This document shows, one piece after another, positions 3,001 to 50,636 of a stretch of 64,000 nt of DNA. The stretch's first letter is position 1. Every line of letters begins with the position of its first letter. Below the pieces are notes generated by a model. The model did no database searches and was not told the DNA's origin. It was given only the letters and a program-made list of their open reading frames with translations. The position numbers were made by a program, and so were the translations under genes. Where the stretch lies: sequence record NC_041972.1; one strand, 5' to 3'.

Positions 3001-5677
3001 CCTGAGCAATCTCTGAAGCCGCCTCTTCTACAGCTTGACGACCAAAGCGACGTTGCAGTTCGGTGGTGGCATTACGCAACGCTTCCTTGCCACCGGATGC
3101 AGCATTCAACAGCGCTTGTTTCACCGCACTGGTGTCCGGACGGACTGAGCTGATCTTGCCAAACAAGTTACTGGCACTCTCACCCATGTTACGCAATGAA
3201 TCACCCAGACCGCCACTACCGCCTGCAGCGCCTGCCGCACCCGCACCACCAAAGCCGTTTACTCGATCGCGCAGACTTTGGCCAAGACTGTTATCCAAAC
3301 GACGAGCAATACGATTAACAGCAGCCTCCCCATATCGCGCACGAAGCTGCTGAAGCACCACTTGATAATATTCCGGACTGTTAGCTCGGGCTTGGGAAAG
3401 TTGTGCACGGACCTCCTCCTCTTGTTCACGGGTGAGTCGACCCCGCAGGTTACCCAGACTGTCTGTTACGCCACGACGCAGGTTATCCAGCGTCTCACGC
3501 CCCATCTCGCCGAGTTCTGCTCCAGGGTTAACATTACTGCCCCGTTCATTGGAATCTTCCCCTTCACGATCAGGACGATAGTTCGGGTTAGCAATGAACT
3601 TCTGCATCATCTCCCAGTACATCTCGTGATTAAAGACATCCTGGCCATTAACCCGTTTGATGACACCCATGTCTTTGAGCTGTGCCCGACTACCACTGTT
3701 GGCCATGGTATTCAGTGACTGCTCGACATTCGGCATATACTGCGACTGGGCCTGCATAACGTTAGACAGGTTGTTACGCATCTGTGCCAGTTCGGGTGCA
3801 TCGCCAATCTGATAATCACCAAAGGCTTTGGCCCGCCCGGTTGCTTCCCGAGTGTCGAAACGTTTGTGCAAGAACTCATTGATCTCCTGCACGGCTTCTT
3901 TATTGGCATTACCCCAACCACTGGACTTCAAGTAGGTGTTGACGTTGAAGCCATCACCCGCTTCAGCATCCCGGGCAAAACGCATCGCTAATGCCACACG
4001 GGCATTGGGTGAGAGTTCCTGATCGGGGTCGAGGGTTTCCACCATGGTGTTGAAGGAACCTGCGGCCGAGGAGAACTCATTGCGATTAAAGATCGACGAA
4101 CGCAGATCGACGTTCGCCCGTTTCTTGGAAGTGAAGCCACCCTGGATGTGGTTGAAGTGCACTTCCGACACCGACCCGACATCTGCTTCCAGTTTATTGG
4201 CAATCGCCGTTTGCTGGGCCAGTTGTTTAGTCAGTAAGCCTGGAATCACTTCCACCAATGAACGCCGTGACATCTGATCCCAAACAGCCGGTTCAGTCAG
4301 GTCTTTCACGCCAGGGTTGTGCAACCGAGTACGGTTACCCATGGAGGCCGGCAATTGAAAGAGGGCGTTATTCAGGAAGGGGTTGACGACGCGCTTTTGT
4401 AACCGCGTGTGCCATTTATTCCCCTCGGCATTCGGATCGAAGTTCTCATCAAACGACTGACGGTTACGTAACCAACCATTGATCAGACCCGGTGCCGCAT
4501 TTGAGTAATAGCTTAAGTCATGACCCATGCGGTTCAGACCCGGGTTACGCGACAGTGCAGGACGGGCTAAAGAGGAAAGCATCATCGGCAACATACCGAC
4601 CAGTCCTTGACCCGCCATCTGTCCGTAGTCACGGGCGCCAAGCGAACGCCCCATCATGCGGGCCTGTTGTGCACCCATCATGGCAGCACGGGCGGCAGCA
4701 ATGCCGCCCGAAGCGCGGTGGTTCATATCCTGGCTACGCTGATCCACCATGTTAAAGACATTGTCAAACAGACGGTTACCAAATTGCGAGACCGTACCAC
4801 CTAACCCACCCAGTGCACGTTTACGAATCAACTCACGGGCCGAGGCAGAATGACTCATCTTTTCGAAGTCAGTTAAGCCGGTATTTTTCACCAGACTTGA
4901 CATGGCGTCCAGACTGCGTTTGTAGAAACGTTCTTGCATCTTGCCAATTGACAACTGCAGTTTATACGAACGGTACTGGAGCTCTAATGACTTGCGCTGG
5001 TAGTTGGCAGTGAACTGCTCATTAAAGCCAACGGTACGGGCTGTGAGGCGATGGATGCCTTGCATGAAGGCCAGACTGTCTGCAGAGACGCTCGCTTGTC
5101 TGGTGGCGACTGCGGCGGTCTGTGCCATGCTCTCTTTATGCAGGGCCACAGCCAGCTGACTCGACTGCAGCGTAGCCTGCTGCATCATGGTGACGTAGTC
5201 ATCGTTCTCGTTACCGGTTGAGCCGTCGTCCAGACCGGGATCGGCAGGTTTGGTGCTGGAGACCGAATAATCGATGTCTTTATTCTCAGCCCAGACTTCA
5301 ATTTGCTTTAAGACCTTCTCCGGCAATTTCCCACCGTACATCGATAATGCATCGAGGGTTAGGTCTTTGATGTCATTGACAGAGTTACGGGTATTACTTT
5401 TAACTTTATCGTATAGGTCATCTTTGAATCTTGCTGCGCGATCTTTTGCATCAAACGCAGGCGAAAACGATGCGGGTAACAAAGAGCGAATGATACGCTG
5501 AGGAGTGCCTTTAGTGAACACTTCCTCTTTGGCACCAGTCCAAAGGCCTGCGGCGAACTCACGAATCGCCCCGCCTTTACCCTTCTTCTTCGTACTTGCA
5601 TCGTCACCGAAATCGAAGTCAAAGTCCAGGTCAAGGTCACCCAGATCTTCGTACTCGACTTTGACATTCTCGGCCAT
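1..5677 (-). CDS. Giant tail tape-measure-like virion protein with GH19-like muralytic domain (phiKZ gp181 position); C-terminus runs off the window
   Basis: ATG at 5677 with AAGGTG SD; starts MAENVKVEYEDLGDLDLDFDFDFGDD. The minus frame has no stops where I translated it by hand (2-290, 1680-2290, 5560-5677). It is absent from the ORF track, presumably because no stop falls in the window. Contains a Gly-rich hydrophobic segment and, near the edge, AMLLAQTHLESGGFSKLEENLRY (GH19-like). Divergent from the vRNAP genes, as in phiKZ-like phages. Confidence 0.85.
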   Translation of the reverse strand, partial: MAENVKVEYEDLGDLDLDFDFDFGDDASTKKKGKGGAIREFAAGLWTGAKEEVFTKGTPQRIIRSLLPASFSPAFDAKDRAARFKDDLYDKVKSNTRNSVNDIKDLTLDALSMYGGKLPEKVLKQIEVWAENKDIDYSVSSTKPADPGLDDGSTGNENDDYVTMMQQATLQSSQLAVALHKESMAQTAAVATRQASVSADSLAFMQGIHRLTARTVGFNEQFTANYQRKSLELQYRSYKLQLSIGKMQERFYKRSLDAMSSLVKNTGLTDFEKMSHSASARELIRKRALGGLGGTVSQFGNRLFDNVFNMVDQRSQDMNHRASGGIAAARAAMMGAQQARMMGRSLGARDYGQMAGQGLVGMLPMMLSSLARPALSRNPGLNRMGHDLSYYSNAAPGLINGWLRNRQSFDENFDPNAEGNKWHTRLQKRVVNPFLNNALFQLPASMGNRTRLHNPGVKDLTEPAVWDQMSRRSLVEVIPGLLTKQLAQQTAIANKLEADVGSVSEVHFNHIQGGFTSKKRANVDLRSSIFNRNEFSSAAGSFNTMVETLDPDQELSPNARVALAMRFARDAEAGDGFNVNTYLKSSGWGNANKEAVQEINEFLHKRFDTREATGRAKAFGDYQIGDAPELAQMRNNLSNVMQAQSQYMPNVEQSLNTMANSGSRAQLKDMGVIKRVNGQDVFNHEMYWEMMQKFIANPNYRPDREGEDSNERGSNVNPGAELGEMGRETLDNLRRGVTDSLGNLRGRLTREQEEEVRAQLSQARANSPEYYQVVLQQLRARYGEAAVNRIARRLDNSLGQSLRDRVNGFGGAGAAGAAGGSGGLGDSLRNMGESASNLFGKISSVRPDTSAVKQALLNAASGGKEALRNATTELQRRFGRQAVEEAASEIAQEAEVVRSSGVFNDGTADRASRTRLPSEGITAPDTGSASETAAIVQAQLDNNALLRETIGVLASVRDSVTATKDATIAQVTGDPDIMKDSVNERQGWLRKLSGRMSNQGKSSGLIRKVFKSLPNINSPVLTVAKWTTVMPAVLGFKATRGLWRMLRDKKREDASDPDHDGVRNNSVADLIRRRAQQKKEREEAQHAHDSDDHAKDKEKPTTLFGLVAGLFSSVTGLVSGIKEFGILGGLAKFLGLGWIGDIVKGIGSVISGGKGVMDELSDALGDDDDGGEEDGGRRRRRRRGGRRNRGGAGGGGGPRPRGGLIRRLAGKAARGVRGLGRGIVGRTGGMLGRGVAGNLKLLVKGGGIVTAGVSALEAWDSYKSGDNAGVAEAAGSGVGGILGGAAMGAAIGSVVPVVGTAIGAIAGGAIGALGGGAIGRSLYTWFNDPGLLQQMRLRQYGVPDNDSSHVSAILKLEAALEPYVKTTDDGYASLDPKAPIAQLGSLFVDDPNDRDQVEQFAGWFLHRFKPVYLTHKAVAKQVLPSQAFMDLDKSTDEAAKYEIAKRAQQFDESSDHPYMFTGRIFPDLNATDRKQTEALVKDVLDRLRNKAQKMTTGKSASVFATGMDKVASSRELSSDMVKAINPNGDIPELKTVGHKESSWFTGDRTVVSAGDLLGGLLPKAGQAMDDLTALRMKVYGLPTLDVDRVSTLLQLELVMANKIKFADNGATFDGKASDIYRVVAASFGLSPSNQWSYKSWEPWFTRRFLPAYLAFASTVYTQTGDSRPTLAVPKMPPELKFAAATAMTNAKYSDGVNAISVWTIKTSPWSTGELNDDASVVQNHLNNLKAQVKQAQYSAEAVKGGVQQRADGTTEKDWRKDSSGNMVNNQVKTSTGQVYTSQRQVTTYNPETGRIETAYGGGAAGGAAGAGGGIDNTGKVGPIKLGPGAEEGARILIREAMKSGITDKQELAMLLAQTHLESGGFSKLEENLRYKAETLMKLWPNRFPTLAA

Positions 5678-40144: not shown

Positions 40145-40417
40145 ATGAAACTAACTTTATGCCAGGCCAACGGGTATTCATTGATTCACCCGGCGTACCA
40201 CAGCCACACCCCGAAGAACAACGTCGTGTTGGCGGAGGGGAAGTTATCCTTTAAAGACAACCGCTGTTTCCTCGGCACCAAAGAGATCGGCCATGTGTTG
40301 GCGAATGGCAATGTACAGCTGAACACCGATGTGGTGCTACCTACCCTCGGCTTTGTCACCGGGTTGCGTAACCAGATCCGCTTCCTGCACAAAACCATTG
40401 CCCGTCAGCTTCATTAA
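40145..40417 (+). CDS. Hypothetical protein, 90 aa
   Basis: CAGGAG SD before ATG 40145; the track extends it upstream into the previous gene. Confidence 0.75.
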   Translation: MKLTLCQANGYSLIHPAYHSHTPKNNVVLAEGKLSFKDNRCFLGTKEIGHVLANGNVQLNTDVVLPTLGFVTGLRNQIRFLHKTIARQLH

Positions 40418-40626
40418 GGTCACAGGGGGTAGTCCAACTACCCCCTCGCCTTTATGCTCTCTTTTTTTTGTATTTAATTACACAAGAGAGCATCGTATGT
40501 AGGTCAGTCGTGACCACCAATAGTGACAACAACTAAATTAAGTTCACCAGTACTCTTGGCGGGGGATGTGTCAGTAACGGTACGCACCCCCGTTCCTTTT
40601 TTATACCGCACCCAAATTCCCGAACA

Positions 40627-40728
40627 GGTTGAGTAGATCACCCAGGTCACGTTGTCCTAGCAGCGTACTTACGGCGCCCGTCGTATCAGACACCCCCTGC
40701 GTCTAAGTTTGACCCGATCTGCTCGACC
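40627..40728 (+). ncRNA. Putative structured ncRNA or 5' leader (multibranch)
   Basis: 13-bp closing helix GGTTGAGTAGATC/GATCTGCTCGACC (2 GU), inner GGTCA/TGACC helix and three hairpins; intergenic. Confidence 0.5.
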
Positions 40729-40761
40729 TTCCTTATCTACCACTACCCTAAGGAACCTGCT

Positions 40762-41082
40762 GTGAGCGATGATATCAAAGTAACCAAACAACTGACCGTG
40801 TCCGCCCCTGAGCACGGCATCAAGGTACAGATCGACGCCCTGGCATTAAAAGACGATGAGCACGCTGATCCTGAGCAGTACCGGATCATCTCAACCGCGA
40901 TCGCTGAAACTGGTGGTGAGCCGTTGACGGAAGGTGAGTTCAATGATTTCCGTCGCTATGACGAAGAAGGTCGTCTGCTGTTCTCCTTCTTCCCGGCCAG
41001 TGGCATCCTTGAGATTGCCCACGGCTACGACAACGAAATCAACCTGACGGTGGTTGTTACTCTGCGTGAAGTCGCTGCGTAA
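40762..41082 (+). CDS. Hypothetical protein, 106 aa
   Basis: AAGGA SD, GTG start. Confidence 0.8.
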   Translation: MSDDIKVTKQLTVSAPEHGIKVQIDALALKDDEHADPEQYRIISTAIAETGGEPLTEGEFNDFRRYDEEGRLLFSFFPASGILEIAHGYDNEINLTVVVTLREVAA

Positions 41083-41193
41083 TGCCTTGCTCAGGTTTAG
41101 GGGTGCGGCGTAACAGCCGCACTATCTCCGTACGGGAGAAACGACGCCGTACTGCGCTCTATCGTGCCTTAGCTAAAGCTAGAGAGGTGTGCG

Positions 41194-41433
41194 GTGGAGC
41201 GAACTGAACTTATGGCCGGCGGGGAATACACCCACTATAAAGGCGGTTGCTACAAGGTTGTTGGGTTTACGAACCTGCATGCAAAAGACAACCCGCAGTT
41301 TATCCCGCAAGTGGTGTATCACTCGATCAGTCCGAACGACCCCAATAACTGGTACTCGCGTCCACTGAGTGAGTTCCTGGAAAAGTTCAGGCCAATTACG
41401 CCTGAAGATGTGAAGGCCGACATCGGTCTTTAA
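41194..41433 (+). CDS. DUF1653-family protein
   Basis: YTHYKGG.Y.V...VVY...WYSRPLSEF signature. Confidence 0.8.
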   Translation: MERTELMAGGEYTHYKGGCYKVVGFTNLHAKDNPQFIPQVVYHSISPNDPNNWYSRPLSEFLEKFRPITPEDVKADIGL

Positions 41434-41508
41434 GCACGACCCGGCTTACGAGCCACGGTGTTACGACACCACCTTTAACTACTACTCTTAACTACTAAGG
41501 AATGACTA

Positions 41509-42648
41509 ATGTCCATGATCGTGAAAATCACCTCGGGTGAAGATAAAGCTGACAACAATGTGAGCAAAGGGTTTGAACTGATCCCAGTAGCGGCCGGTAT
41601 GCGCACTGCCTTTGAGCGCGATGAACAATCCCGCGCCTGGTTTAAGTTGTTCAATACGGATGCAGAAGGTATTGAACAGCAACTGCTCACCCGTCAGGTA
41701 CTGGGTAACGTCTATGTGATGGAAGCCGGTAAGACTATCGCCAGTTTCTCCTCGGCCGATATCAGTGATATCCGGACGTCAGCAGAAGGCACAGTGTTCT
41801 TGAGCAGCCCTGCCAACGGTATCAGTAACCAACCTTATACCGAGCCCGATATCTCAGAGCTCAACATATTGGGGTATAATGACCGCCTGCACGACTATAC
41901 CGAGCTGCCTTTCATCACCTCAGAAGAAGTGAATAATGCCCGGGTGTTTAAGTTTCACGCCAACCCAGAGCCAGAAGTCTGGTATGTCAATGCCGACAAA
42001 AAGTGGCAGCTGCATGAGCAGGCAACACTCAACCATCGTCAGTCTTGCGCAGTAGCCAGTGAGCGCGTAGATGTCGAGGAGTTTGCCAAGGAGCTCGCCC
42101 TGGCCGTATTTGACAGTACCGATGTTTCAGCCAGCAATGATAACATGATGTTTATCAAAACGTTGGCGGCGACGGTGATGACTGCGCACGAGAAGAACGT
42201 CACTGACTACATGGGCCTGGAATTGTTGTCAATCATTCGAGTGCCATTCTCGCGTATCAAATACCTGGAAGAGTATCTGCGTGTGTGCAAGTATCCGGTA
42301 CTGTGTAAGTTCGCCACTGAAGGCACACGTATCGTGAGTTACCATGTGCGAGTGTATGAGCCGATCAATAACATCCTGTCTGGCACCGAGCTGCTGCTCC
42401 AACGCCTCAAAGGCGAACAGAAAGGCCTGGTAAAGAACCTGGTTGATAAGATCGTTAAGTACTACCGTGCGGATTGCACTGTCGTACCGGTCGAGCCCAA
42501 CCTGGTTTTTGATTCACTCGAGGATCGGGCGCTGATCGATGAGTTCAGACGGTTGCTTAAAATCCAGCTGGACTTCATCATGAACGATGACGGTCACTGC
42601 CATACCGCAGTGATCAGTTATCCGAGCATCATCCGTATGGGTGAGTAG
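41509..42648 (+). CDS. Hypothetical protein, 379 aa
   Basis: AAGGA SD; long ORF. Confidence 0.85.
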   Translation: MSMIVKITSGEDKADNNVSKGFELIPVAAGMRTAFERDEQSRAWFKLFNTDAEGIEQQLLTRQVLGNVYVMEAGKTIASFSSADISDIRTSAEGTVFLSSPANGISNQPYTEPDISELNILGYNDRLHDYTELPFITSEEVNNARVFKFHANPEPEVWYVNADKKWQLHEQATLNHRQSCAVASERVDVEEFAKELALAVFDSTDVSASNDNMMFIKTLAATVMTAHEKNVTDYMGLELLSIIRVPFSRIKYLEEYLRVCKYPVLCKFATEGTRIVSYHVRVYEPINNILSGTELLLQRLKGEQKGLVKNLVDKIVKYYRADCTVVPVEPNLVFDSLEDRALIDEFRRLLKIQLDFIMNDDGHCHTAVISYPSIIRMGE

Positions 42649-42767
42649 CAGGTATTTGTAAATAAATACTAGATATCTGCTATTACTATGTAAACTACGA
42701 CGCTCCGAAAATCCCCCAAGATAAAGGAGTCATAACCTCTCCGTTATGCGCCTCGTAGTTTTCTTTT

Positions 42768-42844
42768 GAGACAGGCAAGGACGTCGACTGGGTTCAGCTG
42801 ATACTGTAAAGTGTTGCTGTGTGTGCCCGGTCCCTTGCCGTCTC
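42768..42844 (+). ncRNA. Rod-like GU-rich hairpin, putative ncRNA
   Basis: Nested helices GAGAC/GTCTC, GGCAAGG/CCTTGCC, GACTGGGT/GCCCGGTC, CAGC/GCTG and GATACT/AGTGTT with a GTAA loop. Confidence 0.45.
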
Positions 42845-43001
42845 CTTTTTCTCGATTTGTGCGATTCTCTTCCAGGCTGTTCTTACCTGATCTCGTGTCA
42901 GGAAACAGATCGAAGACAGACATGCGAATCAACTTTGGTAGTGCCTACTATATACACACTTAGCTGTAAATTTTACTCAAAAGCAATATTAAGGATGACC
43001 C

Positions 43002-43169
43002 ATGGACAAGCAGAGAGAAGATTCTATCGTTGAGATGATGACACTCGCTCAGCGATTAAATAACTTAGTCGTTGGAATGCAAGTCCGCAAAGCCCAGTTA
43101 ACGTCAGGTTCCGCCAAAGTCGTCGCTGATGCAATCAGCAAAGCGAATGTGAAACCTGAGGATCACTGA
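43002..43169 (+). CDS. Small hypothetical protein, 55 aa (below track cutoff)
   Basis: Hand-translated MDKQREDSIVEMMTLAQRLNNLVVGMQ...; AAGGA SD. Confidence 0.55.
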   Translation: MDKQREDSIVEMMTLAQRLNNLVVGMQVRKAQLTSGSAKVVADAISKANVKPEDH

Positions 43170-43557
43170 GGTAGCCGTAAACGTAGTGGGTATGGTGGGG
43201 ATCAATGATAGCCCTGCTCGGTGAGTTTGTTAATCCCCGCCGTATCGCTTCGTAGAACACAGGGTCACTCATGACGTGGGGAGTGGCATAAACACCTGGG
43301 GTAGAAGTCCCAACTACATCCAAAATTCAATGACGCCTGTCACAGCCGCTTAAGCGCGCAGAAGATGACTTGTGTGCTCTGTGGCGATACTCGGACTTGC
43401 CAGCCTGTGGGGGCGGAGTAAAGTCTGGGTATTAGCCCGCTGCCATGTTACCACGTGAAAGTCGTGGGGGCGTCACCCTATTAGATCGATCGCTGACAGT
43501 ACGTGTTTATACTTACTTGCTTCTCTGGTTACGCTAACCTATCGTGAGGAGATAAAC

Positions 43558-43854
43558 ATGAATCTGTATATAGTCAAACGTGATGATAGAGCTGTGGATT
43601 TCGAACAGTGTGCGGGGATGGTGGTTGCTGCGTCGTCTGAGGATGAAGCTTTGCGATTGCACCCGATGGTTCTTGACTCTAGCCACCCAGACAATGCTGA
43701 GCGGCACCTGGCTGAATCGGCGGAGAACTTCGAGGATGGTACGTTGTACGGCTGGCCTAGCCAGGACCGTTTTCACGAACTGACCATCACCTTGATCGGA
43801 ACCACACACCTGACTATTCCGCAAGTTCTGTTACTCGACTATAAAGGCGGTTGA
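43558..43854 (+). CDS. Hypothetical protein, 98 aa
   Basis: GAGGAG SD. Confidence 0.8.
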   Translation: MNLYIVKRDDRAVDFEQCAGMVVAASSEDEALRLHPMVLDSSHPDNAERHLAESAENFEDGTLYGWPSQDRFHELTITLIGTTHLTIPQVLLLDYKGG

Positions 43855-43973
43855 TCTAAGTCCGGGGTAACACCCGGACACCCTATTCTGTTTTTCAGTA
43901 CATCACTGGAAGATACTATCGAGAGCAGCCACTCCGATACTCTAACTTATAAAGTTTAAAAAGGATAATAACG

Positions 43974-44627
43974 ATGTCAACCGAAATGACCATTTCTCGT
44001 GCACTGGCTACAGTGAAGTCTTTGAATGTCCGCATCAAAGATATCTCTAAAAAGCAGGTGCTGATTCTGCCAACCGCCGGTACTGGCGACATGCAATCGG
44101 TGATCAACAACAGCATCACTGTTACCGATGCTGAAGCCGCCATCCAGAATAACTGGAATGCGCTGAACGACATGATCAAAGTGCGTAACGATATTCGTGC
44201 GAAGATCATCCTGTCGAACGCCACAACCAAAGTGACCATCGCCGGTAAAGAATACACCATTGTTGAGGCATTGGACTTCCGCAACTCCCTGGTCGAAAAG
44301 AAAGACACGGTTGAGTGCCTGAAGCGCAACTACGACTCCACAATGAAAGTTCACCGCCAGCAGGGCGACATCTACGAAAAGCGTTTAAGCGATGTGCGCT
44401 CCGAAGCCCTGGCCTCCGGCAAGAAGTTTGATGAAGCCAGCTTGAAGACCTTCACCGATCCAATCGATGTGAAGATGAAACCAGGCCTGATCGATCCTCT
44501 GGGTATCTCAGCAGTTATTGAGAAGCTGGACAAAGAGATCGCTGACTTCGAACTTAACGCCGACTACGCGTTGTCCGAATCTAACGCAACGACCAAGATC
44601 ACTGTTGAACTTGGTAACATTGCTTAA
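43974..44627 (+). CDS. Alpha-helical/coiled-coil protein, 217 aa, adjacent to a structured ncRNA
   Basis: AAGGA SD; biased codons; helical heptads; internal repeat SNATTK(V/I)T at two positions. The layout recalls DIP1984-like helical proteins (unverified). Confidence 0.85.
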   Translation: MSTEMTISRALATVKSLNVRIKDISKKQVLILPTAGTGDMQSVINNSITVTDAEAAIQNNWNALNDMIKVRNDIRAKIILSNATTKVTIAGKEYTIVEALDFRNSLVEKKDTVECLKRNYDSTMKVHRQQGDIYEKRLSDVRSEALASGKKFDEASLKTFTDPIDVKMKPGLIDPLGISAVIEKLDKEIADFELNADYALSESNATTKITVELGNIA

Positions 44628-44723
44628 CCCGTATTAAAAGGCTTGTCTTCGTTTGACGAAAGATCAAACACCGCCTTCCTATTTGGCCGGATGGAAGTAA
44701 AATAACCGGCCAGCCATTATACA

Positions 44724-44789
44724 TCTGTAGGTCGCAGGTTCGATTCCTGTCGGGGTGAAACCCGTAGCTCAGTCGGTTAGAGCAGCAGA
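44724..44789 (+). ncRNA. Circularly permuted tRNA-like element (not a decoding tRNA)
   Basis: TCTGT-AGGTC-GCAGG-TTCGATT-CCTGT-CGGG-GTGAAA-CCCG-TA-GCTC-AGTCGGTTA-GAGC-A-GCAGA: anticodon stem 3' strand, variable loop, T arm, capped acceptor, D arm, anticodon stem 5' strand. Confidence 0.85.
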
Positions 44790-44862
44790 ACAACCGCTTA
44801 TGCTAAAAGCAATGATCTTTGGGATCATCAATGGTGTACTGTGAGCACCTTGAAATCACAGG

Positions 44863-44930
44863 TCTAAAGCTTAAAGCTATAACGTATAATGACTAAAGCT
44901 CTAAAGGTTTAAACTTATAACGTTAAAAAG
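44863..44930 (+). repeat. Degenerate 7-8-nt tandem repeats (TAAAG/TATAAC-type)
   Basis: TCTAAAG CTTAAAG CTATAAC GTATAAT GACTAAAG CTCTAAAG GTTTAAAC TTATAAC GTTAAAAAG. Confidence 0.75.
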
Positions 44931-45101
44931 ATCTACACTCCCTGATGACTGTGTTCGTCGGGCTATAACGCTAAAACCTTTTAAACAAATCCTGGGTATT
45001 CCTCCGCTGTGAGGATGGGTAATGTGGAGTGTGGTCTGCCACGTATCGCCGCCAGGCTGTCTTGCGGAGACAAGTCTTTCCCTTTTGCAATAGGTGACCT
45101 A

Positions 45102-45272
45102 ATGACAGGCACTGCATCAATGATCATTGAGCAACCACAACCGGAATTCAATATCCCGTTGAGGTCGCCTTATCCTACCCTTCATGACGTAAGGTTTTCT
45201 ATGTTCCCTGTTATGGGTGAACCTGAGAACGAAGGGTTCGAACAAGATTCAGAAACTGACGCATTACATTGA
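45102..45272 (+). CDS. Small hypothetical protein, 56 aa
   Basis: AGGTG SD before ATG 45102; the track's longer version overlaps the ncRNA. Confidence 0.5.
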   Translation: MTGTASMIIEQPQPEFNIPLRSPYPTLHDVRFSMFPVMGEPENEGFEQDSETDALH

Positions 45273-45313
45273 GGAGATTCAATCGCGCAGGTTCTTAACC
45301 GACTAAAGCCAGG

Positions 45314-45541
45314 GTGACTTGTGTTATCTTGGTAAAAGGTGAACGCGTCGTTACAGCGCATACGACTGAATGGGCCGATCCCCCCTTCGGAGTAATATTA
45401 GCCCAGATCCATTGCACACCAATAAGTCAATGGCTAGCCAGACACACAAAAAACTATTATGCTTCGACAGATGGTAGGTGCCTGATTACTACAATTCGAT
45501 TCGATACCTCAACTAAAAGGCGGACACAAGGGCCGTTATGA
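45314..45541 (+). CDS. Possible small hypothetical protein, 75 aa
   Basis: GTG start with weak SD; otherwise unsupported. Confidence 0.3.
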   Translation: MTCVILVKGERVVTAHTTEWADPPFGVILAQIHCTPISQWLARHTKNYYASTDGRCLITTIRFDTSTKRRTQGPL

Positions 45542-45878
45542 GTGAAGCACCAGGAAACTATACCTTGGTAAGGCCCCAGGCTTTTTATCCTTACCAAGGT
45601 TCTCTTTCTTTTACTACCTGATAATGGGTGGATGCCTTAGTCACCTTTCTTTCACAGAGGCAACAACCTAAGGCGTCTGCCCGCCCTATAACCCGAGTCG
45701 TCTAGCGACAAGACACCGTCAGACCCATTTGGTAACAGCCTAACTTACCTGTTACCCAACCTATGACGGAAACAGGTGGTTCAACTCCACCTCTTGGGTC
45801 TTAGGTATTGGCTTAGGCAAACTCCGTCGCGGCTTTACCCTCAATAGGCTGCGTTGCGTAAGTCAGTACCGTGCTGTG

Positions 45879-46033
45879 CGTCGTACTCCCTGATGAGGCG
45901 CCCGACGTTAAAAGGCACGAAACGGGGACAGAGGATACTCCATCGGTGATTGCAATCAACCACGCTGGGGTTTATACAGGCACTTGAGAGACACGCTGGT
46001 TTCTCGTTGCCTGTCCCTTTGTCCCGTCGGAGT
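45879..46033 (+). ncRNA. Type I hammerhead ribozyme
   Basis: CUGAUGA (45890-45896), stem II G...C, GAAA (45919-45922), stem III ACGGG(G)ACAGAGG/CCUUUGUCCCGU, cleavage triplet GUC (46026-46028), stem I ACUCC/GGAGU. Confidence 0.8.
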
Positions 46034-46435
46034 CCCTTGCGTTCCTGGAGGGATGACACCGCGTTAAGACTGATCCCCTTAACGAAGTTGCAATAGCCGG
46101 GGGTGATTCTTGCAAAGGTTACTCACAGCAGACTGCCTCCGCCAATTGCGGATGGCTTAGGCCCTCAGTCCGTCAGGAAGTTGTCGTTGAATAAGTGACA
46201 GCTGGACTAGGGTTGCATTATAACCCGGCAAGTGTGCAGCCTGTTTTTTCTTCATGTGTACCTGAACCGGTTCAGGAGCCTACAGATGAGGGAACGACGG
46301 GAAGCATATTGCTACCGATCATTTGCTGTGTGACCGGGCCAAGGATGGCATATACCGGAACCAGTAACCGTATTCAGCGCAGGTGCGCTTTCTCTTCCTT
46401 ATCTTGTGGTTAAACCGCGCCTGTCTGGATCATAT

Positions 46436-46466
46436 GTGCCGGGGTCACACCTGGCGCTTATGCCGT
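46436..46466 (+). terminator. Hairpin + TTATGCCG
   Basis: GTGCCGGG-GTCACA-CCTGGCGC then TTATGCCGTC; closes the RNA island. Confidence 0.65.
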
Positions 46467-46540
46467 CTGAGTTGTATCCTTTTTTACTCCTACATTACGA
46501 AGCTGATATACCCATCAATTCAATTTAAAGGAGTTTAGTT

Positions 46541-49661: not shown

Positions 49662-50636
49662 ATGTCAAAACGTTTAACCCGCATCTACGCTTGTGGCGGT
49701 GCTGCCATCAACATCACCGCGGCGCAGAAGGACCAGCACGATCAACTGGGCTTCTCTGACCTCAGCGTATCACGTATCGATACTTCGGATAAGAACATCA
49801 AACCAGGCATGTCACCGAACAGCGTCTACATCCTGGAAAACGCAGACGGTTCTGGTAAAGAGCGTAAGCACAACTACAAAGCGATCGTGGCCTCACTCGA
49901 ACAGATCCTGGCGATGCACAAACCGGGCGATTACAACATCGTCATGATGTCAGCCTCAGGCGGTTCTGGTTCGGTCATCGGTCCGGTAATCATTGGCGAA
50001 CTGCTGAAGCGTAAGATCCCAGTGGTTGCGCTGGTTGTGGGTACCATCGGTTCTGAAACTGAAACGCAGAACTCCATCAATACCCTGAAGTCCCTGGCCG
50101 GTGTCTCTGAAGCTCAGAAAGCCCCACTGGTGATGTCATACTTCCCGGTGAACCAGCACTTCGATCAGCGTGAAGTGGACAAGCAAGTCCTGACCACCAT
50201 GACGCTGTTGCTCAACCTGTTCGACTCGAAGAACATCGAAATCGATTACAAAGATATCGTGAACTTCCTGAACTACACCAACATCCGTAACACCCGCCCT
50301 GGCCTGGTTGGCCTCGAAACGTACAACGACGACGAACTGCAGACCATCGCTGGTACCTCGCCGTTGTCCATGGCGTCAGTGTTCAAAGATGATAACCGTC
50401 CGTTCCTGCCGGTTACCCCGGACTACCATGCCACCGGTACCCGTGACCAGGACATGAAAGATGAGCGTATGCAGTTCAATGCGCACTATGTCATTACCTC
50501 GGCGCCGGTTAAAATGGCGTTTGAAGATCTGAACAAACGTATGAAGCAGATCACTGATCAGCAACATACTCGCGGCCAGAACTTCAACCTGCTGGGTGAT
50601 GGCGACCAGGGTGACGATAACGGGATGTTCCTGTAA
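49662..50636 (+). CDS. phuZ: Phage tubulin PhuZ
   Basis: IYACGGAAINI (T1 loop), SGGSGSVIG (tubulin signature), acidic C-terminal DDNGMFL tail. Confidence 0.95.
   Translation: MSKRLTRIYACGGAAINITAAQKDQHDQLGFSDLSVSRIDTSDKNIKPGMSPNSVYILENADGSGKERKHNYKAIVASLEQILAMHKPGDYNIVMMSASGGSGSVIGPVIIGELLKRKIPVVALVVGTIGSETETQNSINTLKSLAGVSEAQKAPLVMSYFPVNQHFDQREVDKQVLTTMTLLLNLFDSKNIEIDYKDIVNFLNYTNIRNTRPGLVGLETYNDDELQTIAGTSPLSMASVFKDDNRPFLPVTPDYHATGTRDQDMKDERMQFNAHYVITSAPVKMAFEDLNKRMKQITDQQHTRGQNFNLLGDGDQGDDNGMFL

What the first reader, a model, noticed from the sequence alone, without database searches (positions are those of the whole stretch)
44637..45079. About 440-nt ncRNA whose two ends form a 14-bp helix
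Seen: AAAGGCTTGTCTTC, 10 nt after the stop codon, pairs with GGAGACAAGTCTTT (2 GU). Internal helices include TGGCCGG/CCGGCCA, ATGATC/GATCAT, CTGTGA/TCACAG and CTACACTCC/GGAGTGTGG. Known: end-pairing plus a tRNA-like domain is the layout of bacterial Y RNAs, which are much shorter and partner with Ro60. No Ro60/TROVE gene is visible in this window. Inference: a distinct, larger RNA class.
Basis: partly seen in the sequence, partly recalled or inferred. Interest (0 to 1): 0.82.

Follow-up and report, generated by a model that had tools for sequence, protein, structure and literature searches.

The report
Ornate phage RNA with tRNA-like module
The flagged 443 bases are a real, intricately folded non-coding RNA of an Erwinia jumbo phage, and it belongs to a widespread and apparently undescribed family of phage RNAs that always sits directly behind one particular small protein gene, so it probably marks an unknown phage RNA-protein machine.

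Summary
The window is Erwinia phage vB_EamM_Deimos-Minion, a jumbo phage that encodes PhuZ.

**Observation confirmed.** The terminal helix exists: 16 bp, a 2x2 loop, then 4 bp. It covaries in 11 related sequences. Across 45 tested pairs, 95% of cells pair, against 42-48% in slid controls.

**tRNA-like part.** It matches only the tRNA-like core of Rfam YrlA (44.5 bits; gathering score 69). No TROVE/Ro60 gene was found in the window or in Agricanvirus genomes.

**Main result.** The RNA follows gp207, a 217-aa helical protein of the T5.085 / PHROG 1491 family. That family has no Pfam match and about 3,700 clusters. T5, PVP-SE1, phage G, Vibrio, Pseudomonas, Bacillus and Clostridium loci and at least 52 of 69 metagenomic loci carry a homologous 240-440-nt RNA in the same place. 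The shared parts are:
- a closing helix
- a long-range pseudoknot
- an H-type pseudoknot
- about 8 A-rich units at 7-nt spacing
- a pseudoknotted 3' domain

Most members lack the tRNA-like module, which is a recurrent optional insert. No Rfam 15 family and no paper I could search describes this RNA.

**Function.** Unknown. My best guess is an RNA-protein particle with gp207, linked to tRNA metabolism.

The parts
43974..44627 (+). gp207, a 217-aa protein of the T5.085 / PHROG 1491 family, the invariable upstream partner of the RNA. RefSeq calls it 'tail fiber protein'; that name is unverified.
   Evidence: No Pfam match; PHROG 1491 at E = 1e-72. Found in 716 phage records and 3,716 clusters at 50% identity. 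AF2 model with pLDDT 88.6 is a long helical bundle with a small beta-sheet. No informative structural match.
44637..45079 (+). The whole ncRNA, measured from the outer end of P1 to the outer end of P1 (443 nt).
   Evidence: Similarity to phage AH06 stops at window 45086, just past the 3' end.
44637..44658 (+). P1 5' strand. P1a is 44637-44652, the TT loop is 44653-44654, and P1b (GACG) is 44655-44658.
   Evidence: Pairs with 45058-45079. 20 pairs, 12 covarying, 94.9% paired.
45058..45079 (+). P1 3' strand. P1b (TGTC) is 45058-45061, the TT loop is 45062-45063, and P1a is 45064-45079.
   Evidence: Across the family the 3' strand begins UGU directly after GC.
44659..44670 (+). Junction J1 (AAAGAUCAAACA). 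GAUC at 44662-44665 is the proposed 5' strand of the long-range pseudoknot. GACGAAAG (44655-44662) matches the Y-RNA motif GNCGAAN0-1G.
   Evidence: 22 distinct covarying pairings at this position across the family. In the jumbo clade, read by eye from alignment A4 and the post-hairpin sequences, the pairings are GAUC/GAUC, UAAC/GUUA, UGAUA/UAUCA, UGACA/UGUCA and GUAAC/GUUAC. In this window only 3-4 bp with a bulge.
44675..44711 (+). Pseudoknot PK1 (H-type). S1 is CUUCC 44675-44679 with GGAAG 44693-44697. S2 is GGCCGG 44685-44690 with CCGGCC 44706-44711. Loop 3 is the A-rich UAAAAUAA.
   Evidence: Both stems covary. S1 variants: CCUCC/GGAGG, CCUCU/AGAGG. S2 variants: GAGCCGG/CCGGCUC, UGGGUCAG/CUGACCCA, UGGCCAG/CUGGCCA.
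44724..44789 (+). Permuted tRNA-like module of YrlA type. Order: anticodon-stem analogue UCUGU/GCAGA, variable loop, T arm 44734-44750, closed acceptor hairpin 44751-44764, D arm 44767-44783.
   Evidence: Rfam YrlA 44.5 bits, E = 2.5e-8, model positions 23-87 only. All four stems are supported; the acceptor hairpin has 6 of 6 covarying pairs. ARAGORN calls no tRNA or tmRNA.
44812..44828 (+). Hairpin AUGAUC-UUUGG-GAUCAU.
44833..44861 (+). Pseudoknot PK2, specific to this lineage. S1 is GGUG/CACC; S2 is CUGUGA/UCACAG.
   Evidence: S2 covaries in AH06 and in L164-166. The SA002 clade has a plain hairpin here.
44863..44930 (+). Single-stranded array of A-rich units at 7-8-nt spacing (CUAAAGC, UUAAAGC, AUAACGU, CUAAAGC, CUAAAGG, UUAAACU, AUAACGU, AAAAAGA).
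   Evidence: Left unpaired by RNAalifold. Across the family, AAAG spacing peaks at 7, 14 and 21 nt, with a median of 8 AAAG per RNA against 2.5 in shuffles.
44940..44962 (+). Local hairpin CCC-UGAUGACUGUGUUCGUC-GGG inside the repeat region.
   Evidence: Sister clades have a hairpin at the same place.
44963..44986 (+). Second short block of A-rich units (AUAACGC, UAAAACC, UUAAACA).
44987..44995 (+). Conserved AAAUCCUGG. CCUGG (44991-44995) is the 5' strand of the 3'-domain pseudoknot PK3.
   Evidence: Pairs with CCAGG 45052-45056. Covaries to CCCGG/CCGGG in the jumbo clade. By eye in the, 75 sequences: CCUAG/CUAGG in T5 and CUUUG/CAAAG or CCUUG/CAAGG in the core family.
45001..45014 (+). Inserted hairpin CCUC-CGCUGU-GAGG, present only in Deimos and AH06.
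45024..45042 (+). 3'-domain hairpin GUGG-AGUGUGGUCUG-CCAC.
   Evidence: The stem covaries: UGUGG/CCACG, AGUGA/UCACU and GGCAC/GUGCU; AGCGA/UCGCU in pEa_SNUABM_48 by eye. The loop keeps GGUUCG or GGUCUG.
45043..45056 (+). Proposed 3' strand of the long-range pseudoknot (GUAUC, 45043-45047), followed by CGCCG and CCAGG (45052-45056).
45009..45272 (+). Annotated CDS gp208 (87 aa, GTG start). It overlaps the last 71 nt of the RNA and is probably not a gene.
   Evidence: Its first 71 nt lie in the covarying RNA, and similarity to AH06 breaks at 45086, inside this ORF.

Best explanation
**Shown.** Window 44637-45079 (+) encodes a compact, multi-pseudoknotted non-coding RNA. It is the jumbo-phage version of a large RNA family that lies directly downstream, on the same strand, of a ~210-aa helical protein gene (T5.085 / PHROG 1491; here gp207).

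The family core consists of:
- a closing helix P1 whose inner end reads ...ACG / UGU...
- a long-range pseudoknot between the junction just after P1 and a segment about 10 nt before the P1 3' strand
- an H-type pseudoknot (PK1)
- a variable region
- a single-stranded array of A-rich units at 7-nt spacing (median 8 AAAG per RNA)
- a pseudoknotted 3' domain (AAAUCCUGG ... hairpin ... CCAGG)

In this lineage the variable region holds a YrlA-type permuted tRNA-like module and a second pseudoknot.

**Inferred.**
1. The RNA is co-transcribed with gp207. In relatives it is cut free by the tRNA-processing machinery or ended by a terminator.
2. It then assembles with the co-encoded protein into an RNA-protein particle. 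The heptad array would serve as a multivalent single-stranded platform and the pseudoknotted ends as a nuclease-resistant scaffold.
3. The optional tRNA-like module would recruit proteins that recognise tRNA, as proposed for bacterial Y RNAs. This ties the particle to tRNA or RNA metabolism, or to defence against attack on tRNAs, during infection.
For: **RNA reality**
- 45 pairs in 11 sequences are 95.1% paired against 42-48% with slid partners. 25 pairs change on both sides, and 0 of 500 shuffles reach the observed values.
- G-U pairs are frequent (for example UG in 9 of 11 sequences at one P1 position). These would be A-C mismatches on the other strand, so the fold is specific to the + strand.
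- PK1, PK3 and the 3' hairpin covary. The long-range pseudoknot shows 22 distinct complementary pairs.

**Family and linkage**
- A 360-520-nt gap follows the gene in T5, PVP-SE1 and phage G. The same holds in Vibrio, Pseudomonas and Bacillus phages and in Clostridium contigs.
- The full-length RNA follows the gene in 6 of 6 metagenomic jumbo-like loci.
- An anchored P1 of at least 12 bp is found in 30 of 69 gene-first loci against 6 of 1,380 shuffles. Sequence profiles detect the RNA in 52 of 69.
- In an RNA-first scan, the 16 hits with the gene upstream include all 15 with an anchored P1 of 13-21 bp (the 16th, L271, has 7 bp). The other 50 hits have at most 11 bp, other spacer lengths and no gene, so they look like chance matches.

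**Biogenesis**
- In 8 of 46 loci a same-strand tRNA gene starts 3-12 nt after P1.
- Intrinsic terminators follow the RNA in Cody, VCM, Hobo and L241.

**tRNA link**
- tRNA genes lie in 24 of 99 fetched loci.
- tRNA-like modules recur in distant members: L241, L243, L250 (two modules), L251 and L172.

**Heptads**.

**Protein**: conserved Ser/Asn/Thr motifs (SNATTKVTI and SESNATTKITV) repeat twice at the sheet end of the helical bundle.
Against: - There is no expression data, so a discrete stable RNA is not shown.
- Protein-RNA binding rests on gene linkage alone.
- The protein family is mildly acidic (median pI 5.9). It has no known RNA-binding fold; its weak fold matches are to helical bundles such as BAR domains and alpha-pore-forming toxins.
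- Three quarters of the fetched loci have no tRNA gene within 1.5-3 kb, and this window has none.
- The long-range pseudoknot is weak in this particular phage (3-4 bp with a bulge).
- Profile or helix detection failed in about a quarter of gene-carrying loci. Some of those do carry the RNA by eye (L181, L241).
Confidence: 0.55

Rival explanations
1. It acts alone as an RNA sponge or decoy. The array of A-rich heptads would soak up a host RNA-binding protein or an A-specific ribonuclease, for example a degradosome component or a defence or toxin RNase. The pseudoknots would protect the RNA from degradation. The upstream protein would be only a co-expressed helper or an unrelated passenger.
For: - Many short single-stranded repeats in a 300-400-nt RNA is the layout of CsrB/RsmZ-type sponges (own knowledge).
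- The heptad periodicity and 3-fold AAAG enrichment are real.
- The cassette sits in variable accessory regions with no other conserved neighbour. One locus has a Tad2-like anti-defence gene 2 kb away.
- The protein looks unlike an RNA binder.
Against: - The RNA was never seen without the gene in the RNA-first scan. That is hard to explain if the protein is irrelevant.
- No known host protein with a 7-nt register or an AAAG specificity could be named.
- The ornate conserved 5' and 3' domains are more than a sponge needs.
Confidence: 0.2
2. It is a cis-acting 3' UTR element of the gp207 mRNA. It would act as a stabiliser, a terminator or processing platform, or a translational feedback site for the upstream gene or the tRNA precursor, rather than as a trans-acting RNA.
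For: - It begins 1-75 nt after the stop codon in most loci (median 15 nt, up to 212 nt).
- It is followed by terminators or tRNAs.
- A pyrimidine-rich tail follows P1 in the jumbo clade.
Against: - 240-440 nt with three or four covarying pseudoknots and a repeat array far exceeds known 3' stabilisers.
- In PVP-SE1 a terminator-like hairpin lies between the gene and the RNA.
- tRNA-like modules make no obvious sense for cis control.
Confidence: 0.1
3. It is a true Y RNA (YrlA relative). It would bind a Ro60/Rsr protein of the host through the terminal helix and the GACGAAAG motif, and tether it to an exonuclease through the tRNA-like module.
For: - The YrlA covariance model matches the tRNA-like core at E = 2.5e-8.
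- The ends pair.
- GACGAAAG (44655-44662) fits GNCGAAN0-1G, the proposed Rsr contact (PMC4201824).
- Bacillus phage G encodes a TROVE protein 6.5 kb from its copy of the cassette.
Against: - The score is below the gathering score (44.5 against 69), and only model positions 23-87 match.
- The motif is not conserved in sister clades.
- Most family members have no tRNA-like module.
- There is no TROVE in the window or in Agricanvirus genomes. Phage contigs with genuine YrlA-like patterns do have TROVE next door.
- It is four times the size of any Y RNA.
Confidence: 0.07
4. It is a ribozyme, for example a reduced RNase-P-like or self-processing RNA that serves the phage tRNA cluster.
For: - A closing helix followed directly by a long-range pseudoknot, a conserved GAAA(A) junction, an ornate fold and tRNA neighbours are compatible with catalysis.
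Against: - No RNase P, intron or ribozyme model of Rfam 15 matches, even at E up to 10.
- Apart from short motifs (CGAAA, AAAUCC, GGUU) there is no universally conserved core of the kind catalytic RNAs show.
- The heptad array is unexplained.
Confidence: 0.05
5. It is a DNA-level element, such as a replication origin or protein-binding iterons with inverted repeats, and not an RNA.
For: Short direct repeats flanked by inverted repeats can mark origins (own knowledge).
Against: - Many conserved G-U pairs would be A-C mismatches on the other strand.
- Nested and pseudoknotted covariation, a fixed orientation relative to the gene, and tRNA-like modules all point to RNA.
Confidence: 0.03

Closest known systems
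YrlA / bacterial Y RNAs (Rfam RF02553)
   Same: - A permuted tRNA-like module: T arm, closed acceptor hairpin and D arm on an anticodon-stem analogue.
- The 5' and 3' ends pair.
- The RNA is encoded directly next to a protein gene on the same strand.
- A CGAA-containing motif sits at the inner end of the terminal helix.
   Different: - 443 nt against 90-130 nt.
- The neighbouring gene is a 217-aa helical protein, not Ro60/TROVE.
- It has three or four pseudoknots and a heptad array that Y RNAs lack.
- The tRNA-like module is optional in the family.
- The match is below the Rfam gathering score.
ROOL and GOLLD (and Drum) RNAs
   Same: Large, ornate, pseudoknotted RNAs of unknown function, found in phages and prophages and often beside tRNA genes (PMC12286853; own knowledge).
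   Different: - No match to their Rfam models.
- Smaller (240-440 nt).
- Obligately linked to one protein gene.
- Contains a single-stranded heptad array.
- Nothing is known about oligomerisation.
tmRNA
   Same: A tRNA-like domain, several H-type pseudoknots with A-rich loops, and an A-rich single-stranded segment, in an RNA of 300-450 nt.
   Different: - The acceptor stem is closed by a loop, so there is no CCA end to charge.
- There is no tag reading frame, and a 7-nt period cannot be read as codons.
- ARAGORN finds none.
- The ends form a plain helix rather than the tRNA-like domain.
CsrB/RsmZ-type protein-sponge RNAs
   Same: A few hundred nucleotides carrying many short, imperfect, regularly spaced single-stranded repeats.
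   Different: - The repeat is UNAAAGN rather than GGA.
- The repeats are not presented in hairpin loops.
- Large conserved pseudoknotted domains flank them.
- The bound partner is unknown.
OLE RNA with OapA/B/C
   Same: An ornate RNA of unknown biochemical function whose gene is tightly linked to a partner protein gene and which works as an RNA-protein particle.
   Different: No sequence or structure similarity, and phage rather than cellular. Partnership with the protein is inferred here, not shown.

Membership tests
YrlA / Y RNA | Reaches the Rfam RF02553 gathering score over the full model. | tested here: not met
   44.5 bits against 69, covering model positions 23-87 of 114 only. Relatives score 32-42 bits.
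YrlA / Y RNA | tRNA-like module with T arm, acceptor-like hairpin and D arm. | tested here: met
   Located at 44724-44789. All stems are supported by covariation.
YrlA / Y RNA | Encoded next to a Ro60/Rsr (TROVE) gene. | tested here: not met
   A TROVE profile finds nothing in the window. A TROVE tblastn of all phage records shows no Erwinia group among the genera named. Control loci with YrlA-like patterns do have TROVE ORFs.
YrlA / Y RNA | Terminal stem carrying the conserved Rsr-contact motif GNCGAAN0-1G. | tested here: inconclusive
   GACGAAAG is present at 44655-44662 and also in T5. Sister clades have UGCGGGU or AGCGGGA, and many family members have UACGAAAA or CACGAAAA.
YrlA / Y RNA | Binds Ro60 protein. 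| not testable with these tools
   This needs pull-down or gel-shift experiments.
tmRNA | A chargeable acceptor end (CCA) and a tag reading frame. | tested here: not met
   The acceptor stem is closed by the loop GUGAAA. ARAGORN finds no tmRNA, permuted forms included.
ROOL / GOLLD / RNase P / group I intron | Match to the family covariance model. | tested here: not met
   No match at the gathering score in the 64-kb window. None at E up to 10 in 44400-45700. None at E up to 0.05 in 8 distant loci.
T5.085-associated RNA (family defined in this report) | Lies directly downstream of a T5.085/PHROG 1491 gene, on the same strand. | tested here: met
   It starts 9 nt after the gp207 stop codon.
T5.085-associated RNA (family defined in this report) | Closing helix whose inner end reads ACG followed by AAA on the 5' side, and GC followed by UGU on the 3' side. 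| tested here: met
   GACG-AAAG at 44655-44662 and GGC-UGUC at 45055-45061.
T5.085-associated RNA (family defined in this report) | Long-range pseudoknot between J1 and the 3' domain. | tested here: inconclusive
   Clear in relatives. In this window only GAU/AUC plus G-C across a bulged U.
T5.085-associated RNA (family defined in this report) | H-type pseudoknot PK1, an A-rich heptad array, and an AAAUCCUGG...CCAGG 3' domain with a hairpin. | tested here: met

The most novel reading that the evidence does not exclude
The T5.085-family protein and its RNA form a previously unrecognised class of phage RNA-protein particle, present in thousands of virulent phages of Gram-negative and Gram-positive hosts. 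The heptad array would line up about 8-12 copies of the helical protein, roughly one per 7 nt, on a pseudoknot-capped scaffold. Plug-in tRNA-like modules would direct the particle to the host's tRNA-handling or tRNA-attacking enzymes. This would make the YrlA-type tRNA mimic a portable RNA domain used well beyond Ro60 biology.
Probability: 0.3. Interest if true: 0.92.

Novelty: categorically new. Interest (0 to 1): 0.84.

Why it matters
- **A large unexplained cassette.** A two-part cassette (a small protein of unknown fold family plus a 240-440-nt multi-pseudoknotted RNA) appears conserved from T5 to jumbo phages and Bacillus and Clostridium phages. It is unannotated, or mis-annotated as 'tail fiber' or 'hypothetical protein'. 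It would be one of the most widespread phage non-coding RNAs without a function.
- **It is testable now.** T5 and E. coli K-12 carry it, so it can be studied in a standard laboratory system.
- **The tRNA mimic is not tied to Ro60.** The YrlA-type module turns up as an optional insert in several distant family members, which bears on how Y RNAs arose and what the module recruits.
- **Possible link to tRNA defence.** Its frequent position inside tRNA clusters, sometimes 3-12 nt before a tRNA, suggests a role in the contest over tRNAs between phages and bacterial defence systems.
- **Annotation.** CDS gp208 here, and similar small ORFs in relatives, overlap the RNA and should be reconsidered.

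Tried and rejected
- **tmRNA or permuted tRNA gene.** ARAGORN finds nothing, the acceptor stem is closed and there is no CCA end.
- **Known Rfam families.** None at the gathering score in the window. Only the partial YrlA match at relaxed thresholds. None in 8 distant loci.
- **IMG/VR scan for T-arm plus D-arm.** It returned more than 119 generic loci that share only the tRNA-like part.
- **Scan with the repeat-region pattern.** It found only phage RAY itself.
- **One badly designed pattern.** It found nothing because Deimos has AAAATAAC, not TAAATAAC.
- **Single-protein locus search in IMG/VR.** Only 2 loci.
- **Unanchored 'longest long-range helix' test.** Not discriminating: A/U-rich shuffles give 10-14 bp. 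It was replaced by the anchored test.
- **MAFFT alignment A4.** Out of register for PK1 stem 2 and for the 3' domain, so those helices were tabulated per sequence instead.
- **Structure and sequence searches with gp207.** Only a protein of unknown function (PDB 3kdq) and low-probability helical bundles.
- **Literature.** Nine searches found nothing on this RNA, on T5.085, or on tRNA-like RNAs in jumbo phages.
- **Heptads as complements of one tRNA anticodon loop.** UUAAAAG would match the tRNA-Lys(UUU) loop. I dropped this because the conserved core is only AAAG.
- **A gene lost from 45080-46540.** The AH06 172-aa gene has no remnant there.
Full report
**Source and setting.** The window is identical to Erwinia phage vB_EamM_Deimos-Minion (NC_041972.1, Agricanvirus, 273.5 kb). 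Window position equals record position minus 124,000. A PhuZ tubulin gene at 49662-50636 places it among the PhuZ-encoding (phiKZ-like) jumbo phages. The flagged segment lies between gp207 (43974-44627) and gp209 (46541), in a 1.9-kb stretch with no convincing ORF. The annotated gp208 (45009-45272) overlaps the last 71 nt of the element.

**Checking the observation.**
- The two ends pair as described, and further. 44637-44652 pairs with 45064-45079 (16 bp, including G-U pairs). After a TT/TT loop, GACG pairs with TGTC.
- The 443-nt segment folds better than all 100 dinucleotide shuffles (z = -3.5).
- Rfam at gathering scores finds nothing in the 64-kb window, and ARAGORN finds no tRNA or tmRNA.
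- With relaxed thresholds the only meaningful match is YrlA at 44726-44789: 44.5 bits, E = 2.5e-8, gathering score 69. It is restricted to model positions 23-87, the tRNA-like core.
- The sequence there reads, in order: variable loop, T arm, an acceptor stem closed by a loop, then D arm, on a 5-bp anticodon-stem analogue. This is the permuted order typical of YrlA.

**Close relatives and covariation.**
- The element is nearly identical in 16 records of the Ea35-70 group and 86% identical in AH06, where similarity stops at window 45086. It is about 70% identical in Salmonella phage SA002 and Erwinia phages pEa_SNUABM_37/48.
- Six metagenomic contigs found through gp207 homologues carry the full-length RNA directly after the gene. 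So do L176, L177, L181 and L172.
- On an 11-sequence alignment I counted 45 pairs: P1, PK1 stem 1, the anticodon-stem analogue, and the T, acceptor and D stems. 95.1% of cells pair against 42-48% when partners are slid by 1-3 columns. 25 pairs change on both sides, and 0 of 500 shuffles reach the observed values.
- Conserved G-U pairs would be A-C on the other strand, so the structure belongs to the + strand transcript.
- Per-sequence tabulation shows covariation in four further helices:
  - PK1 stem 2 (GGCCGG/CCGGCC, GAGCCGG/CCGGCUC, UGGGUCAG/CUGACCCA and others)
  - the 3' pseudoknot (CCUGG/CCAGG against CCCGG/CCGGG)
  - the 3' hairpin
  - PK2 stem 2
CTACACTCC/GGAGTGTGG competes with the conserved 3' hairpin and is limited to two phages.

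**The unexpected part: a much larger family.**
- gp207 has no Pfam match and belongs to PHROG 1491, labelled 'tail fiber protein'. tblastn finds it in 716 phage records. These include T5-like, PVP-SE1-like, Bacillus, Vibrio and Pseudomonas phages and phage G.
- A profile search finds 3,716 clusters at 50% identity, nearly all of 205-215 aa.
- In T5, PVP-SE1, phage G, Vibrio phage Cody, Pseudomonas phage VCM and Bacillus phage Hobo the gene is followed by a 360-520-nt unannotated gap.
- Reading those gaps and 80 metagenomic loci shows one architecture:
  1. A closing helix of 13-21 bp. Its sequence differs from locus to locus, but the 5' strand ends ...ACG and the 3' strand starts UGU....
  2. 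A junction AAAAYCAYAAAC.
  3. An H-type pseudoknot with an A-rich third loop.
  4. A variable region.
  5. A run of A-rich heptads.
  6. A 3' domain of the form CUUUCAAAUCYUUGAG...GGUU...hairpin...CCRCAARGC.
- Lengths run from 240 to 443 nt, and this window's RNA is the longest I saw.
- The junction pairs with a segment about 10 nt before the P1 3' strand. There are 22 distinct complementary versions, for example AACCAU/AUGGUU, AAUCAC/GUGAUU, AAACUAUA/UGUAGUUU and UACGCA/UGCGUA.

**Statistics for the family claim.**
- A naive longest-helix test was not informative, because A/U-rich shuffles reach 10-14 bp.
- I then required the two fixed flanks: AA after the 5' strand and GC before the 3' strand. 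Contiguous helices of at least 12 bp occur in 30 of 69 loci against 6 of 1,380 shuffles, and the distribution is clearly bimodal.
- Sequence profiles of the 5' and 3' domains find at least one domain in 52 of 69 loci, always in the right order. Some of the misses carry the RNA by eye.
- An RNA-first scan of IMG/VR with a 3'-domain pattern gave 66 hits. Sixteen of them have the protein gene directly upstream. Fifteen of those 16 have an anchored P1 of 13-21 bp followed by AAAAC; the sixteenth, L271, has 7 bp. The other 50 hits have at most 11 bp, different spacer lengths and no gene, as expected for chance matches.
- So the RNA was never found without the gene. Two Clostridium genome contigs also carry the pair.
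- No Rfam 15 model matches the RNA in 8 distant loci. Nine literature searches found nothing on it.

**The tRNA-like module in context.**
- Most family members have plain hairpins in the variable region.
- T-arm-like hairpins outside real tRNA genes occur in all jumbo-clade members. They also occur in distant members:

| Locus | Module |
|---|---|
| L241, L243 | YrlA-type permuted module |
| L250 | two permuted modules |
| L172 | one with a class-II-like D arm |
| L251 | unpermuted D, anticodon and T arms without an acceptor stem |

- The module therefore looks like a recurrent plug-in rather than the core of the RNA.
- Phage contigs with genuine YrlA-like patterns have TROVE genes next door. 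A TROVE profile finds nothing in this window. A TROVE tblastn of all phage records names no Erwinia group, whereas the 19 Erwinia records that carry this RNA would rank second in that list.
- A comparative study of jumbo phages also reports TROVE only in a small subset of its groups 2 and 3 (PMC7824862). I did not check which group Agricanvirus falls in.
- GACGAAAG at the inner end of P1 fits the proposed Rsr-contact motif GNCGAAN0-1G (PMC4201824). It is not conserved in sister clades.

**Heptads.**
- In 26 distinct RNAs, AAAG occurs a median of 8 times against 2.5 in shuffles.
- The spacing between successive copies peaks at 7, 14 and 21 nt.
- RNAalifold leaves the region unpaired.
- A 7-nt register rules out coding.

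**Biogenesis clues.**
- The RNA starts a median of 15 nt after the stop codon.
- In 8 of 46 loci a same-strand tRNA gene begins 3-12 nt after the last P1 base. RNase P cleavage there would define the 3' end.
- In Cody, VCM, Hobo and L241 a clear intrinsic terminator follows instead.
- tRNA genes lie within the fetched flanks in 24 of 99 loci. This window has none.

**The protein.**
- The AlphaFold model (pLDDT 88.6) is an elongated helical bundle with a small sheet built from N- and C-terminal strands.
- The most conserved residues form two similar Ser/Asn/Thr motifs (SNATTKVTI and SESNATTKITV), each at the junction of a helix and a strand.
- The only structural relative is a protein of unknown function, PDB 3kdq.
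- The median pI is 5.9.
- So nothing but linkage argues for RNA binding. I mark that step as inferred.

**Conclusion.**
- The Y-RNA framing is only partly right. The RNA is a member of a broad, apparently undescribed phage RNA family tied to the T5.085-type protein. It carries a YrlA-type tRNA mimic as an accessory domain.
- My preferred mechanism is an RNA-protein particle built on the heptad array and connected to tRNA metabolism. The main rivals are a protein-independent sponge and a cis-acting 3' element.
- All of this can be tested directly in T5 on E. coli K-12.

Noticed in passing
window 45009-45272: Annotated CDS gp208 (87 aa, GTG start) overlaps the last 71 nt of the RNA. AH06 and SA002 have differently placed small ORFs at the same spot. 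These are probably over-annotations.
   Followed up: partly
window 45080-46540: A further 1.46 kb without a convincing ORF follows the RNA. It is conserved only within Agricanvirus (78.8% identity to AH06). AH06 has an extra 172-aa gene inserted there, and that gene has no remnant in this window. Other non-coding elements may be present.
   Followed up: partly
window 40400-46540: This is a gene-poor stretch. Only gp204 (379 aa), gp205, gp206 and gp207 are called across about 6 kb, with gaps of 350-900 nt.
   Followed up: no
window 49662-50636: A PhuZ-type phage tubulin (PHROG 4733; Pfam Tubulin and TubZ_C_2), so the phage belongs to the PhuZ-encoding, phiKZ-like jumbo lineage.
   Followed up: yes
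L163 (Bacillus phage G, NC_023719 400614-401228 and 407741-408982): Phage G carries both the T5.085-type gene plus RNA and, 6.5 kb downstream, a TROVE/Ro60-like gene (gene 540). It is the only place where the two systems were seen in one genome region.
   Followed up: no
L161 (T5, NC_005859 40848-41566): The T5 record annotates 'rnaX, stable RNA with unknown functions' about 1.6 kb downstream of the newly recognised RNA (43140-43496, minus strand). That RNA itself is unannotated.
   Followed up: no
L167 5486-5740: A Tad2-like (anti-Thoeris) gene lies about 1.4 kb downstream of the RNA (1.8 kb from the gp207-family gene) in one jumbo-like contig. This hints that the neighbourhood holds counter-defence genes.
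   Followed up: no
L194 and L197, first ~410 nt after the gene: Instead of the usual RNA, these two loci show a perfect 68-bp inverted repeat whose arms start 1 nt after the stop codon and end about 400-412 nt downstream. This may be a different element or an extreme P1.
   Followed up: no
L251, ~95-165 nt after the stop codon: This family member carries an unpermuted tRNA-like piece (D arm, anticodon-like arm and T arm) without an acceptor stem. Other members have the permuted YrlA-type order.
   Followed up: partly
L162 (PVP-SE1) 3155-3200: A terminator-like hairpin with a U tract lies between the protein gene and the RNA, so co-transcription may be attenuated or the RNA may have its own start there.
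   Followed up: no
window 45080-45090 and the homologous positions in relatives: A conserved pyrimidine-rich tail (UUUYCCCYYU) follows the P1 3' strand in the jumbo clade. Its role (3' tail or terminator U tract) is unknown.
   Followed up: no
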